From Asterias rubens (Eukaryota), in NCBI RefSeq assembly GCF_902459465.1, contig NC_047076.1, positions 3,844,001 through 3,908,000 of the forward strand: DNA of 64,000 bases, written 5' to 3'. The position numbers and the translations under genes were made by a program. Position 1 is the first letter of the stretch; every line of letters starts with the position of its first letter. Positions 1,973 through 48,750 of this stretch are shown here, piece after piece. The notes under the pieces were generated by a model that worked only from the letters and a program-made list of their open reading frames with translations, was not told the DNA's origin and did not search any database.

Positions 1973-2139
1973 GGGTCGATTTCACAAATAGTTAGGACTC
2001 GTCTTATCTCGAGTTAGGACGAGTAACTCGTCTTAACTTAGGATTAATCTTAAGGTCTGCATGCTACAGTGCAGGGTTGGGACTCGTCCTAAGTCCTAAG
2101 ATTAGTCTTAAGTTAGGAAGAGTTTTGTGAAATCGACGG
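1973..2139. mobile_element. Family C MITE (PIF/Harbinger-like, CTG TSD)
   Basis: TIRs gggtcgatttcacaaa / ttttgtgaaatcgacgg; CTG on both sides (1970-1972, 2140-2142); internal ttaggac/gtcctaa repeats. Confidence 0.85.
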
Positions 2140-6902: not shown

Positions 6903-7255
6903 GGACACAGTGCGTTGCAGGTCACACTTTTTACTTAAAGGCACAACCGTCGATTTCACCAAACGCTATGATTAATCTTATCTCGAGTTAGGACGGTTGT
7001 CCTTAACTTAGGATGGATTCAATGCGTCATTATGTCTATGAATGCATAACTTAACTCGTCTTAAGTCCTAAAGTGGCACAGTACTGCGTTGCAGGTCACA
7101 CTTTACTTAAAGGCACATCCGTCGATTTCACCAAACTCTTTACCTAATAATATTTAGGATTAATTCTTAGGACAATGGACGAGTTCGGTTTCGTATCCAT
7201 TGACGTTTACTAAGACACATTTAACCCATTCTAAGTTAGGACGGTTTACTCGTCT
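6903..7255. mobile_element. Two family C copies in opposite orientation, each preceded by the same ~45-bp flank
   Basis: tgcgttgcaggtcacacttt(tt)acttaaaggcac-NN-ccgtcgatttcaccaaac occurs at ~6911 and ~7086. The first continues into the C left arm, the second into the reverse complement of the C right arm. Confidence 0.75.
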
Positions 7256-8257
7256 CTGTGCCAAGCAACTATCGTATAATTTACAGATAGGCATATACTT
7301 TCGTAAAGTCTATAAACGTATTCGTCCGTCTAAGCCGCAGTAACAGTTTTGGGGCTGTTTACAGTGAATTCACCAAATTCTGTAATCCTCTTTTGAATGA
7401 GTGTTGGCTCTGAAAAGAGCCGGTTTGGTCTCGACGTTTCGAACAGTATGGAGAAAGACAAGTGCAGTATCTCGACTGCCAGAAAGTCCCTGCATGGAAC
7501 AAACAAGTACTATCTTTGTATACACAAAGGTCACGTAGTCTCTAGTAGACTGACTTAAGCCTGATTTCTATGCTTTACAACCACTGGAAGTATCCTTACC
7601 CAAATACAAGTATACAGGGTCCCAGACCCAGGTACGCAAGCATGCCCTGAGTGTCACAGTTCAAAAAAAATAATGTCGGTTGATCAAAGACAGGCTAACT
7701 TTCCTTAAAACCTACCTACACCTGTTGTCTTGGTGGATAATCTTTCTTCAAATGGAAACCAACTCGCAGGTAATAACTTTTGTAAAGCATTGAACTTTTC
7801 CCACACGGGAAAAAAAAAAAACGCGTGCAGAATCTTTAATATTGAATTTGCATTGAGTGACGCTAGCCGCTGGAGAGCCCCTTGGTTGACCGGCCAGCTC
7901 AAACCCCTCATTAATACACATGAAGTGGGTTATCCTAGCTCGTAGTTTTTTATCAAAGGGATGGGAGAGGGGCGACATAAACACTTAACGGGAAGTCAGA
8001 GGGTAGTGGATAAAGGGACAGGTTGGATGGGGACGACTTGGCGGATCTGTAGGGATATTTTGTCCGCTGGGGCGACTCGACCCATTTTGTTGGTGAATAA
8101 ACCACATCAACTTTTCTCATTGGTTCGCAGCGTTGGCAGTTTTCGGGATGCCATCAAATTTGGAGACTTTCTCTTGAGGTGTTGCTGTGTTTGATCTAGT
8201 TCTAGTTTGCATTCTGATACAATGTATACTGAAATTCAATTGTCTAAAGGTCACTCC

Positions 8258-22543: not shown

Positions 22544-23001
22544 TTAAAGGTAATGGTTTGGATTTCATAAAGAGTTCAGACTAGTCTTATCTCGAGTTAG
22601 GACGAGTTATTCTTCTTAACTTAGGACTAGCCTTAAGTTCTTTCTGAAATCGACCCCTGGAAAATGTTGGTAATTGCCAAGGACCGGTACTCAACATAAG
22701 CATAACATGTGAACATTTTGACTCAATTGATCATCGAGGTTGCGAAAGAATAATGACAGTAACAAGACACTTTTCTCACAAATTTGTGTGCTTCCATCAG
22801 ATGCGTAAACAAGGCTTCAGCTGAAGGATGTAGTTATTTGAGTGAGAAATTACTTCTGTCTCAAAAACTACATGCTAACTCGTAGGGAGCTGTTTCTCGT
22901 AATGTTTTATACCCTCACCAGCTCTCCATGTTTGTAAACCAACTACGTTTGTAAATTATTAATTATTTTGAGTAATAACCAATAGTGTCCAGTGCCTTTA
23001 A
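22544..23001 (-). mobile_element. Family A MITE with family C inserted in its TIR
   Basis: ttaaaggtaatg [C] ctggaaaatgttggtaattgcc ... aatagtgtccagtgcctttaa. Confidence 0.8.
22556..22656. mobile_element. Family C MITE, internally deleted
   Basis: gtttggatttcataaagag ... tttctgaaatcgaccc followed by ctg. Confidence 0.8.
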
Positions 23002-24763: not shown

Positions 24764-25152
24764 TTAAAGGCAGTGGACACTATTGGTAATTGTCAAAGAC
24801 TAGCCTCCACAGTTGGTGTATCTCAACATAATATGCGTAAAATAACAAACCTGTGAAAATGTGTGCTCAATCGGTCATTGAACTTGCAAGATAATAATGA
24901 AAGAAAAAACACCCCTGTCACACGAAGTTGTGTGCGTTTAGATGGTTGATTTCGAGACCTCGAGTTCTAAATCTGAGGTCTCGAAATCAAATTCGTGGAA
25001 AATTACTTCTTTCTCGAAAACTATGGCACTTCAGAGGGAGCCGTTTCTCACAATGTTTTATACCATCAACCTCTCCCCATTACTCGTCACCAAGAAAGGT
25101 TTTATGCTAGTAATTATTTTGAGTAATTACCAATAGTGTCCACTGCCTTTAA
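24764..25152 (-). mobile_element. Family A MITE, full length, palindrome subfamily
   Basis: Perfect TIRs ttaaaggcagtggacactattggtaatt / aattaccaatagtgtccactgcctttaa. Confidence 0.95.
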
Positions 25153-27200: not shown

Positions 27201-27586
27201 TTAAAGGCAGTGGACACTATTGGTAATTACTCAAAATAATTATTAGCATAAAACCTTACTTGGTGACGAGTAATGGGGAGAGGTTGATGGTACAAAACAT
27301 TGTGAGAAACGGCTCCCTCTGAAGTGACATAGTTTTCGAGAAAGGAGCAATTTTCAACTAGTTTGATTTCGAGACCTCGGGTTTAGAACTTGAGGTCTCG
27401 AAATCAACCATCTAAACGCACACAACTTCCTGTGACAAGGGTGTTTTTTCTTTCATTGTTATCTCGCAACTTCGACGACCAATTGAGCTCAAATTTTCAC
27501 AGGTTTGTTATTTTATTCATATGTTGAGATACACAAAGTGAGAAGACTGGTTCTTGACAATTACCAATAGTGTCCAGGGTCTTTAA
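27201..27586 (+). mobile_element. Family A MITE, full length, palindrome subfamily
   Basis: TTAA ends, TIRs and internal palindrome. Confidence 0.95.
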
Positions 27587-41002: not shown

Positions 41003-41386
41003 TTAAAGGCACTGGACACTATTGGTAATTGTCAAAGACCAGTCCTCTCACTTGGTGTATCTCAACATATGCATGAAATAACACCTGTCAAAGTTTGAGC
41101 TCAATTGGTCGTCGAAGTTGCGAGATAATAATGAAAGGAAAAACACCCTTGTCACACGAAGTTGTGTGCTTATAGATGCTTGATTTCGAGACCTCAAATT
41201 CTAAATCTGAGGTCTCGAAATCAAATTCGTGGAAAATTACTTCTTTCTCGAAAACTATTTCACTTCAGAGGGAGCCGTTTCGCACAATGTTTTATACTAT
41301 CAACGTCTCCCCGTAACTCCTCACCAGGTAAGGTTTCATGCTAATAATTATTTTGAGTAAATACCAATAGTGTCCACTGCCTTTAA
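41003..41386 (-). mobile_element. Family A MITE, full length, palindrome subfamily
   Basis: TTAA ends and near-perfect TIRs. Confidence 0.95.
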
Positions 41387-42897: not shown

Positions 42898-43208
42898 TAA
42901 ATGTATACAAAATAAGCTGCATCTCAGTTAATGCGCCAATTTTGGTCTGACTCTGCCATTATCCAGATTTGTCTAAATGAAGAGGTAATTGGAATTGTTG
43001 TCCTCTCCTTTGTGTAAATATTGTGAAAGATATTGTGGTTTGTTTTGTGTATATATATTTATATGTCAATAAATAATCCAGTCAGTCGTACATTTGTTAG
43101 GCGCCAATCCAGCGCTCGATGCCCATGGCGGCTTATAATAAGCAAATATAGTACGTTTTAAGTGAAGTTTGAAGATGGCTTCTGAGGGGAATTATTAAAC
43201 GAGTCGTG

Positions 43209-43356
43209 AGGCCGATTTCACAAAGCAATGAAATTCATTGCAAGACAATTCGCAGTATTACCACAGTGATTTGCATTGTGACATCACACTATATACTTAG
43301 CAACTACGATTGATTTGCAGTTAAGAGCTATCTAAGCTCTTTGTGAAGTCTGCCCC
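43209..43356. mobile_element. MITE with ggccgatttcacaaag TIR (C/D-related)
   Basis: ggccgatttcacaaag ... ctttgtgaagtctgccc. Confidence 0.65.
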
Positions 43357-43361
43357 ATCAG

Positions 43362-43562
43362 TGCCCAATTTCAAAGTGCTACTTATGCAAACAAACATTG
43401 AGTAACAGTTATTTTTTGCTTAGCTGAAATGAGCAGGACACCAGACACAAATTGTACACATGACATGTAACGTTGGCTGGTAACGTTATTGTGGATAGTA
43501 AGCATCATTTTGATGTGCTTGGTTACTGTCTGTGCTTGTAAGCAGCTCTGTGAAATTGAGCC
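43362..43562. mobile_element. Family D MITE, CAG TSD
   Basis: cag|tgcccaatttcaaag ... gcagctctgtgaaattgagcc|cag. Confidence 0.75.
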
Positions 43563-48235: not shown

Positions 48236-48750
48236 TTAAAGGCACTGCTGCCGATTTCAAGAAACGGTAGGATGCATCATATATCGAGTTAGGACGAGTT
48301 AAACTCGTCCTGTTTTAGACTGGGTTCATTGTGTCATAACTGCTAAGGTTATTGGAACTTAACTCGTCCTAAGTCCTAAGATTAATCCTAAATTAGAAAG
48401 AGTTTGGTTAAATAGACTAGCTGGATAGAGTTAGTAGTTGCTTAAATTAATTGATAGCAAACAAACTTACTCGTTAACGAGCAATGGAGAGCTAGCTGTT
48501 GATAATATAAAACATTGTGAGAAAATACCTACCCTTCTCACTTTCTTAAAAAATACTTTGGGACTGAAAGGCTCTTGTAGACATCTGAAAGCACAGAAAT
48601 TTGTGCGAAGAGGGTTTTGTTTCTTTGTATTATTCCTGTGCAACTTCGATGACCAATTTAGTCAAATCTTGTTATTTGGCATATGCTGGAAATACACCAA
48701 GTGAGAATACTGGTCTTTGACATTTTACCAAAGGTGTCCAGTGCCTTTAA
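48236..48750 (+). mobile_element. Family A MITE with family C inserted in its left TIR
   Basis: ttaaaggcactg [C] ctggatagagttagtagttgc ... ggtgtccagtgcctttaa. Confidence 0.85.
48248..48420. mobile_element. Family C MITE, CTG TSD
   Basis: ctgccgatttcaagaaac ... gagtttggttaaatagactag, flanked by ctg (48245-48247) and ctg (48421-48423). Confidence 0.8.

What the first reader, a model, noticed from the sequence alone, without database searches (positions are those of the whole stretch)
48236..48440. A Harbinger-like MITE repeatedly inserts at the same CTG inside the Kolobok-like MITE terminal repeat
At 48248-48420 family C splits the A left TIR exactly at ttaaaggca-CTG|gacact, with CTG duplicated. 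At 22556-22656 a differently deleted C copy splits the opposite-end TIR of another A copy at the equivalent position (ttaaaggtaatg..ctggaaaatgttggtaatt). The two C copies near 6945 and 7117 also follow ttaaaggcac, and the copy at 1973 (CTG TSD) lies ~25 bp before an A copy lacking its TIR start. All 5 C copies here sit in or beside A ends. Known: some Harbinger elements have extended CWG-centred target preferences. Inferred: this family targets another transposon's TIR, which would immobilise the A copy and give C a safe, abundant niche.
Basis: partly seen in the sequence, partly recalled or inferred. Interest (0 to 1): 0.7.

Follow-up and report, generated by a model that had tools for sequence, protein, structure and literature searches.

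The report
Transposon hot spot inside another transposon
A small transposon that inserts at CAG/CTG lands about twenty times more often than average at one three-base site in the end of a very abundant TTAA-type transposon, largely because that site resembles its usual preferred target, so it is a landing hot spot and not a dedicated parasite of the other element.

Summary
The core observation is real. Family C is a roughly 165-bp MITE with ends SSGTCGATTTCAC and CWG flanks. It splits the terminal repeat of family A (TTAA|AGGCA-CTG-GACAC) exactly at the CTG at window 48248-48420 and 22556-22656. The other three window cases are weaker. The junctions at 6945 and 7117 are one junction present twice, and 1973 lies 32 bp from a truncated A copy.

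Exact whole-genome counts support a hot spot. A-repeat halves flank 134 + 154 of about 3,660 CWG-flanked C ends, about 8%. That site class is only about 0.16% of CWG half-sites, so enrichment is about 20-fold. A sister subfamily gives the same share.

The insertions are independent. 99 of 100 listed composites have different outer flanks, C sits in both orientations, the junction types are mixed, and host A copies are 12-16% diverged while C copies are 1-2% diverged.

About 90% of C insertions lie elsewhere. A simple weight matrix from non-A sites (ARRRAC|CWG, like zebrafish Harbinger3_DR) already predicts 8- to 13-fold enrichment. Targeting of a "TIR niche" is therefore not needed.

One unexpected result: 40% of full-length C copies have flanking triplets that differ in the middle base (CAG..CTG). 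This is unexplained.

The scan noted the same hot spot earlier on other pieces of this genome.

The parts
48236..48247 (+). TTAA target site, outer 5 bases of the A terminal repeat (AGGCA) and left flanking triplet CTG
   Evidence: matches the A repeat consensus TTAAAGGCACTGGACAC
48248..48420 (+). old, diverged family C copy (173 bp), left end next to the outer half of the A repeat
   Evidence: 79-88% identity to the young copy at 1973
48421..48750 (+). right flanking triplet CTG (48421-48423) and the remainder of the host A copy, ending in GTGCCTTTAA
22544..22555 (+). TTAA, AGGTA (outer half of the A repeat, one change) and left triplet ATG
22556..22656 (+). 101-bp internally deleted copy of a sister subfamily of C (GGGTGGATTTCAC..CGACCC type)
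   Evidence: same end type as L033, L034, L039
22657..23001 (+). right triplet CTG and the remainder of a second, different host A copy (the opposite, asymmetric end of A)
1973..2139 (+). young family C copy (3 differences from the 30-copy consensus), flanked by CTG at 1970-1972 and 2140-2142; near, not in, a truncated A copy that starts about 2172
6935..7078 (+). TTAAAGGCA-CAA junction followed by a C left part that lacks its right end
7107..7270 (+). the same junction again (TTAAAGGCA-CAT, same 45-bp upstream flank), followed by a C right part in reverse orientation

Best explanation
Family C is a non-autonomous PIF/Harbinger-type (NuwaI-like) transposon. It integrates at CWG with a 3-bp duplication and has an extended, roughly palindromic target preference, ARRRAC|CWG|GTYYYT. 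The CTG 10-12 bases inside the terminal repeat of the TTAA-type MITE family A happens to score in the top 2% of CWG sites for that preference. Family A supplies about 36,000 copies of that site. That one site class therefore takes roughly 8-10% of C insertions (strict repeat matches; more if degenerate repeats are counted), through many independent events spread over several C subfamilies and ages. Shown: the enrichment, the independence of the events, and the general target motif. Inferred: that transposase-level sequence preference, and not recognition of A as such, is the cause. The partner transposase was not identified.
For: Counts, exact over the whole genome:
- 4,724 ends SSGTCGATTTCACAA, of which 3,660 carry CWG.
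- 134 ends are flanked by AAAGRCA+CWG and 154 by WRGTGTC+CWG.
- AAAGRCACTG occurs 35,958 times and the intact repeat AAAGRCACTGGACAC 21,408 times.
- CWG sites number about 11.2 million, scaled from 264 kb. The resulting enrichment is about 23-fold.
- The sister subfamily with end GGGTGGATTTCAC has 136 outer-half junctions among 2,931 CWG-flanked ends, the same share.

Independence:
- 99 of 100 listed composites have different 10-base flanks outside the TTAA, on all chromosomes.
- GG and CC ends, CAG and CTG triplets, and GGCA and GACA repeat variants occur in many combinations.
- Host A copies are about 84-88% identical while C copies are 98-99% identical.

General preference:
- 103 non-A flanks tallied by eye give C at -1 (65%), A at -2 and purines at -3 to -6.
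- The matrix built from them predicts that 3.4% and 7.2% of insertions fall in the outer- and inner-defined sites, which is 7.6- and 13.4-fold enrichment.

Per-site rates (occupied ends per available half-site):
- repeat site 3.7e-3
- GAC|CWG 1.5e-3 (407 ends)
- A site 2, TCAAAGAC|CAG, 1.6e-3 (48 of 29,195)
- average 1.6e-4

Literature:
- NuwaI elements have CWG duplications and terminal repeats that start GGG (PMC4482050).
- Harbinger3_DR integrates into AAACACCWGGTCTTT (PMC3016246); its right half is the same AAAGAC|CWG half-site.

The genome holds more than 50 loci with a DDE_Tnp_4 domain, several with open frames of 370-600 aa.
Against: - Observed enrichment (about 20-fold) exceeds the matrix prediction by about 1.5- to 3-fold, and the repeat site is about 2.3-fold hotter than generic GAC|CWG half-sites. 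Something beyond the simple matrix contributes. Candidates are longer or dependent positions, better survival of insertions in repeats, or DNA structure of the repeat.
- The matrix rests on hand tallies of 103 listed flanks from one chromosome.
- The outer half of the repeat has A, not the favoured C, next to the triplet.
Confidence: 0.75

Rival explanations
1. Dedicated targeting: the C transposase system has evolved to recognise the A terminal repeat as a safe, abundant niche, disabling A copies in the process.
For: The repeat CTG is the hottest site class measured, at 3.7e-3 per half-site against 1.5-1.6e-3 for sites with the best consensus half. A 1.5- to 3-fold excess remains over the matrix prediction. 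Several subfamilies of different age hit it.
Against: About 90% of insertions are elsewhere. The same motif explains non-A sites. Other hot spots exist: A site 2, and the ends of other CWG MITEs. Host A copies are old and mostly already dead when the young burst hit them. The consensus half-site equals that of a fish Harbinger that has no link to family A (PMC3016246).
Confidence: 0.1
2. Retention bias: C inserts by its CWG motif alone, and insertions inside dead repeats survive better than those in functional DNA. This would inflate the share seen in A.
For: The residual 1.5- to 3-fold excess. About 17% of the 30 youngest copies lie in A-like DNA, against about 6% of a random 200-kb sample being A-like.
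Against: It cannot produce a 20-fold excess at one triplet while the rest of A is only mildly enriched. It is at most an add-on.
Confidence: 0.1
3. Composite amplification: one ancestral A-with-C composite was copied, so the cases are not independent insertions.
For: A few local duplicates exist. The window junctions at 6945 and 7117 are one. So is a pair on C18 with the same flank. A 1,103-bp tandem triplet sits on C8.
Against: 99 of 100 outer flanks differ. C sits in both orientations. GG and CC ends, GGCA and GACA variants and three inner-half variants are mixed freely. Host A copies are 12-16% diverged while C copies differ by 1-2%.
Confidence: 0.03
4. Chance: A is so abundant that C copies fall into it without any preference.
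For: A-like DNA makes up 16% of this window and about 6% of a random sample.
Against: About 6 outer-half junctions are expected from the share of CWG half-sites, and 134 are observed.
Confidence: 0.02

Closest known systems
Harbinger3_DR (zebrafish PIF/Harbinger element, reconstructed and active)
   Same: CWG-centred 3-bp duplication and an extended palindromic target. Its consensus AAACACCWGGTCTTT (PMC3016246) contains the same AAAGAC|CWG half-site found here.
   Different: C is a 165-bp non-autonomous element in an echinoderm-sized genome and its preference is looser. Here the preferred motif is supplied in bulk by another transposon's terminal repeat.
NuwaI group of the PHIS (PIF/Harbinger-ISL2EU-Spy) superfamily (PMC4482050)
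   Same: 5'-CWG-3' duplications and terminal repeats that start GGG (GGGTCGATTTCAC, GGGTGGATTTCAC). The group is restricted to animals.
   Different: No echinoderm is listed among the hosts in that survey. The partner transposase and Myb-like gene were not identified here. The most abundant young subfamily has its terminal dinucleotides switched (CC..GG).
mPing / Tourist MITEs with Ping/Pong transposase
   Same: Short non-autonomous PIF/Harbinger derivatives with a 3-bp duplication whose middle base may be A or T, and burst-like amplification. Staggered cleavage across the duplication has been proposed for them (PMC4561436).
   Different: Their target is TWA, not CWG. In yeast, mPing did not pass its donor flank bases to new sites (45 of 46; PMC4561436). 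Here 40% of copies have unequal flanks.
Kolobok superfamily / T2-MITEs of Xenopus (for family A)
   Same: TTAA target site and terminal repeats that start AG/AGG (PMC6004289). Family A reads TTAA|AGGCACTGGACAC.
   Different: The T2 motif is AGGRR and A has AGGCA. No Kolobok transposase was linked to A here. piggyBac, which also uses TTAA, is not formally excluded.

Membership tests
PIF/Harbinger superfamily, NuwaI group (family C) | 3-bp target site duplication of the form CWG | tested here: met
   About 77% of ends carry CWG (3,660 of 4,724). Paralogous intact A repeats show a single CTG where occupied sites have two triplets. Caveat: the two triplets differ in the middle base in 40% of full-length copies.
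PIF/Harbinger superfamily, NuwaI group (family C) | Terminal inverted repeats, usually starting GGG | tested here: met
   Ends are GGGTCGATTTCACAAA and GGGTGGATTTCAC..CCACCC. The commonest young subfamily reads CCGTCGA..TCGACGG.
PIF/Harbinger superfamily, NuwaI group (family C) | Mobilised by a DDE (DDE_Tnp_4) transposase plus a Myb/SANT-like protein from an autonomous element with matching ends | not testable with these tools
   The genome has 91 DDE_Tnp_4 matches, several in open frames of 370-600 aa. No link to the C ends is shown.
PIF/Harbinger superfamily, NuwaI group (family C) | Extended palindromic target around the triplet, as in Harbinger3_DR | tested here: met
   ARRRAC|CWG from 103 flanks. 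GAC|CWG is enriched about 9-fold.
MITE (family C) | Short, non-coding, high copy number, homogeneous, with terminal inverted repeats and a duplication | tested here: met
   163-173 bp, thousands of ends, and the top 40 copies are 97-100% identical.
Kolobok superfamily (family A) | TTAA target site duplication | tested here: met
   Window copies are flanked by TTAA on both sides with no further duplication beyond it.
Kolobok superfamily (family A) | Terminal repeat starting with purines (AG; AGGRR in T2-MITEs) | tested here: inconclusive
   A starts AGGCA. AG/AGG is met; the fourth base is C, not a purine (PMC6004289).
Kolobok superfamily (family A) | Kolobok-type transposase in an autonomous relative with the same ends | not tested
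   No search was made. It has little bearing on the finding.

The most novel reading that the evidence does not exclude
The unequal flanking triplets record the integration chemistry. Among full-length copies the counts are CAG..CTG 101, CTG..CAG 49 and equal 228. Where the target is known, one flank keeps the target's base and the other carries the opposite base. The proposed reading is that the excised element keeps 3-base 5' overhangs from its donor's flanks. This is the cleavage geometry proposed for mPing, and what piggyBac does with TTAA. On this reading the overhangs are ligated opposite the target's single-stranded CWG without repair synthesis. An A:A or T:T mismatch is left, and at replication one flank ends up donor-derived. 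That would be genomic evidence for synthesis-free, piggyBac-like integration in a PIF/Harbinger lineage. Usual annotation pipelines would miss it because they discard copies whose flanks are not identical.
Probability: 0.3. Interest if true: 0.65.

Novelty: new member of a known kind. Interest (0 to 1): 0.42.

Why it matters
- It shows with exact counts how a sequence-specific DNA transposon and an abundant older one interact. The older element's terminal repeat becomes the main single landing site simply by carrying a good copy of the target motif about 36,000 times.
- This warns against reading nested-insertion hot spots as co-evolved targeting.
- It extends CWG-targeting Harbinger/NuwaI-type elements, and the Harbinger3_DR-like extended target, to what appears to be a starfish genome.
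- The unequal flanking triplets, if they reflect carried-over donor overhangs, would bear on an open question: how PIF/Harbinger elements are cut out and pasted in.

Tried and rejected
All later genome-wide work had to use exact pattern counts and their listings, with no further loci.
- L004 and L006 first looked like A-repeat insertions (TTAAAG.GC-CAG|CTG-G..). Their flanks are not family A, so they were dropped.
- Test for inheritance of flank triplets by lineage. The GG+ACTCTTCC haplotype seemed tied to CTG..CAG in the class lists. A direct listing gave CAG 6 and CTG 5 on the left side, all with different flanks. No support.
- Public runs laid on L011, a discordant young copy, to look for an empty allele. 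Repeat-derived contigs swamped the output and no bridging piece was found. Uninformative.
- Post-insertion hairpin repair as the cause of unequal triplets. It is disfavoured, because the youngest 30 copies are at least as discordant (15 of 25) as the whole set (40%).
- Point mutation as the cause. Rejected, because these copies have exact 16-base ends and 1-3% divergence.
- PMC2290759 (my recollection of the id for the Harbinger3_DR paper) is not held. The target consensus is cited from a review instead.

Full report
THE SETTING

The window is G000:C16:3844001-3908000 of a 417.6-Mb assembly in 150 contigs. The size fits my memory of that assembly, but I did not test the name.

THE TWO FAMILIES

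Family A is a roughly 380-bp MITE.
- It is flanked by TTAA and has a terminal repeat of about 29 bases, AGGCACTGGACAC[C/T][T/A]TTGGTAATT, with two different internal ends.
- A-like DNA is 15.9% of the window and 6.2% of a random 200-kb sample. Copies are about 84% identical to one another.
- TTAA plus an AG/AGG start fits Kolobok/T2-MITE-type elements (PMC6004289). No transposase was linked to A.

Family C is 163-173 bp.
- Its ends are SSGTCGATTTCACAAA..TTTGTGAAATCGACGG and it is flanked by CWG.
- The 40 best genomic copies are 97-100% identical to the window copy at 1973.
- The 30 fetched copies differ from their consensus by 1-5 bases.
- Sister subfamilies with ends GGGTGGATTTCAC..CCACCC also exist.

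THE WINDOW CASES

- 48236-48247 reads TTAA-AGGCA-CTG. An old C copy follows at 48248-48420, then CTG and a diverged but recognisable continuation of the A repeat and body, up to 48750.
- 22544-22555 reads TTAA-AGGTA-ATG. A 101-bp copy of a sister subfamily follows at 22556-22656, then CTG-GAAAATGTTGGTAATTGCC, which is the opposite end type of a different A copy.

The other three are weaker.
- The junctions at 6945 and 7117 share 45 bases of upstream flank plus TTAAAGGCA-CA[A/T]-CC. One is followed by a C left part and the other by a C right part. This is one rearranged junction. Its triplet is not CWG and no inner A half is visible.
- The young copy at 1973-2139 is not in an A repeat. Twenty-nine unrelated bases separate it from an A copy that lacks its first 16 bases.

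GENOME-WIDE COUNTS

Pattern searches of the window's own genome return exact whole-genome counts.
- Ends SSGTCGATTTCACAA: 4,724. With CWG in front: 3,660.
- About one in six listed ends belong to a tandem repeat that captured a C copy.
- Ends preceded by the outer half of the A repeat (AAAGRCA+CWG): 134.
- Ends preceded by the inner half (WRGTGTC+CWG): 154.
- Each insertion in the repeat gives one end of each kind, so about 8% of CWG-flanked ends, and of events, are at this site under strict matching. My reading of 165 non-satellite listed flanks gives 11% clear cases and up to about 20% with degenerate repeats.
- AAAGRCACTG occurs 35,958 times and the intact repeat AAAGRCACTGGACAC 21,408 times.
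- CWG sites number about 11.2 million, scaled from 264 kb.
- The outer half-site class is thus 0.16% of CWG half-sites but takes 3.7% of ends, a 23-fold enrichment. About 6 are expected and 134 are seen.
- The sister subfamily gives 136 outer-half junctions among 2,931 CWG-flanked ends, the same share.

INDEPENDENCE OF THE EVENTS

- A listing that shows 10 bases outside the TTAA gives 99 different flanks among 100 composites, on all chromosomes.
- Different outer flanks alone would not exclude a composite moved by the A machinery. The junctions, however, mix GG and CC ends of C (both orientations), CAG and CTG, GGCA and GACA repeat variants, and three inner-half variants.
- The host A copies that could be read are 12-16% diverged while the C inserts differ by 1-2%.
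- A few local duplicates exist: one pair on C18, a 1,103-bp triplet on C8, and the window's 6945/7117 pair.

WHY THIS SITE

From the listings I tallied by eye the six bases in front of the triplet. The tally covers 103 CWG-flanked ends that are not in an A repeat, not in the satellite and not at another MITE's end.
- Position -1 is C in 65%.
- Position -2 is A in 47%.
- Positions -3 to -6 are mostly purines, and C is nearly absent at -4.
- The half-site is ARRRAC|CWG.
- This equals the right half of the Harbinger3_DR target AAACACCWGGTCTTT (PMC3016246). It fits the NuwaI group: CWG duplications and repeats that start GGG (PMC4482050).

I applied a weight matrix from these counts to all 7,061 CWG sites of the 264-kb sample.
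- The A-repeat CTG falls at the 98th percentile.
- The matrix predicts 3.4% (outer-defined sites) and 7.2% (inner-defined sites) of insertions. That is 7.6- and 13.4-fold enrichment.

Exact per-site rates agree in order of magnitude (occupied ends per available half-site):

| Site class | Rate | Basis |
|---|---|---|
| A repeat CTG | 3.7e-3 | |
| GAC\|CWG half-sites | 1.5e-3 | 407 ends, |
| Second site inside A, TCAAAGAC\|CAG | 1.6e-3 | 48 of 29,195; |
| Average CWG half-site | 1.6e-4 | |

Two further observations fit the motif explanation.
- Within A repeats the GGCA variant is hit about three times more often than GACA, relative to their abundance (64:36 occupied against 36:64 intact). This is the direction the matrix predicts.
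- Ends of other CWG-type MITEs are also recurrent landing places.

Most of the enrichment therefore follows from the family's general target preference. A residual of about 1.5- to 3-fold remains. It could come from longer-range or dependent positions, from better survival of insertions in dead repeats, or from some real affinity for the repeat.

VERDICT ON THE INTERPRETATION

- The hot spot is real, recurrent and independent.
- About 90% of insertions are elsewhere, and the site is what the family's own motif would choose.
- The A copies hit by the recent burst were already old.
- 'Targets another transposon's repeat as a niche and immobilises it' is therefore not needed and is largely untestable here.
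- This agrees with an earlier follow-up of the same phenomenon on another piece of this genome (s1-180033).

AN UNEXPECTED OBSERVATION

The two flanking triplets are often unequal in the middle base. Gap patterns gave these counts for full-length copies with exact 16-base ends:

| Flank pair | Copies |
|---|---|
| CAG..CTG | 101 |
| CTG..CAG | 49 |
| Same sense on both sides | 228 |

- So 40% are discordant. Point mutation cannot do this in copies 1-3% diverged.
- The 30 youngest copies are at least as discordant (15 of 25), so it is not an effect of age.
- Where the original target is known from intact paralogous sites, one flank keeps the target's base and the other has the opposite base. 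This holds for L026, L030, L016 and L003.
- In A-repeat insertions the outer flank reads CAG instead of CTG in 27/100, 23/100 and 14/100. The inner flank is non-target in 10/100. At A site 2 the figure is 8/48.
- Sister subfamilies show the same: 5 of 11 and 6 of 17 pairs read.

A mechanism that fits is carry-over of the donor's flanking triplet.
- The excised element would keep 3-base 5' overhangs from the donor's flanks. This is the geometry proposed for mPing excision (PMC4561436), and what piggyBac does with TTAA (the piggyBac point is from my own knowledge).
- The overhang would be ligated opposite the target's gap. The resulting A:A or T:T mismatch would segregate at replication.
- This predicts up to 50% discordance, about 25% non-target bases per flank, and an A:A versus T:T asymmetry.
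- Against it: mPing with TCA/TCA donor flanks gave 45 of 46 TTA/TAA insertions in yeast (PMC4561436, section 8). A lineage test here showed no clear inheritance of flank type.
- I rate this reading at about 0.3.
- Surveys that require identical duplications would not see the effect. Examples are the C. inopinata preprint 10.64898/2026.05.26.728016 and TIRfinder in PMC2213677.

LIMITS

- The matrix and several class counts rest on hand tallies of listings.
- The CWG background is scaled from 264 kb, which includes an A-rich window. In that sample the intact repeat was 18% over-represented relative to its exact genome count.
- No autonomous partner could be read.
- The public-run check was uninformative.

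Noticed in passing
Where the target is known, one flank keeps the target base and the other carries the opposite one. This is too frequent for mutation and does not depend on age. The cause is unknown; carry-over of donor overhangs is one candidate.
   Followed up: partly
L039:5891-9561; G000:C1 around 21.05, 23.95, 24.28 and 25.05 Mb: A C copy with one fixed flank (CTTTGACCCTAACCATCCTG) is part of a tandem repeat. The period is about 1,686 bp in L039 and about 810-820 bp on contig 1. It makes up roughly one sixth of the listed C ends.
   Followed up: partly
family A copies, e.g. window 41030-41045; G000 genome-wide: There is a second landing site for C inside family A, TCAAAGAC|CAG|TCTTC, about 25 bases inside one end. 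It has 48 occupied ends against 29,195 intact sites (example L016).
   Followed up: yes
listings; L034:4990-5010: C repeatedly sits right next to the ends of other CWG-flanked MITEs (flanks ..AAATTGGGCC-CWG and ..GAAATCCACCC-CTG). It appears to reuse their flanking triplet as its target.
   Followed up: no
G000: Among A repeats the GGCA variant is occupied by C about three times more often than the GACA variant relative to their abundance (64:36 occupied against 36:64 intact, first 100 of each list).
   Followed up: partly
window 41175-41225 and other A copies (24764-25152, 27201-27584): Family A carries an internal inverted repeat of about 40 bases (GATTTCGAGACCTC...GAGGTCTCGAAATC) in the middle of the element.
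   Followed up: no
window 43205-43365: An unrelated short element has a similar end (GGCCGATTTCACAAAGC ... CTCTTTGTGAAGTCTGCCCC) but no internal similarity to C. It is probably another family of the same superfamily.
   Followed up: no
G000, e.g. C18:5448340-5448819, C3:7249700-7250203, C22:5256655-5257140: There are 91 matches to the PIF/Harbinger transposase domain DDE_Tnp_4. Several lie in uninterrupted frames of 370-600 aa, which makes them possible active partners. Their DNA could not be fetched.
   Followed up: no
L004:about 1500; L006:about 1500: Two young C copies sit in TTAAAG(T/G)GC-CAG|CTG-G(G/T)(T/C)C contexts that mimic the A repeat, but their surroundings are not family A. These are look-alike targets outside A, consistent with a sequence motif being what is recognised.
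   Followed up: partly
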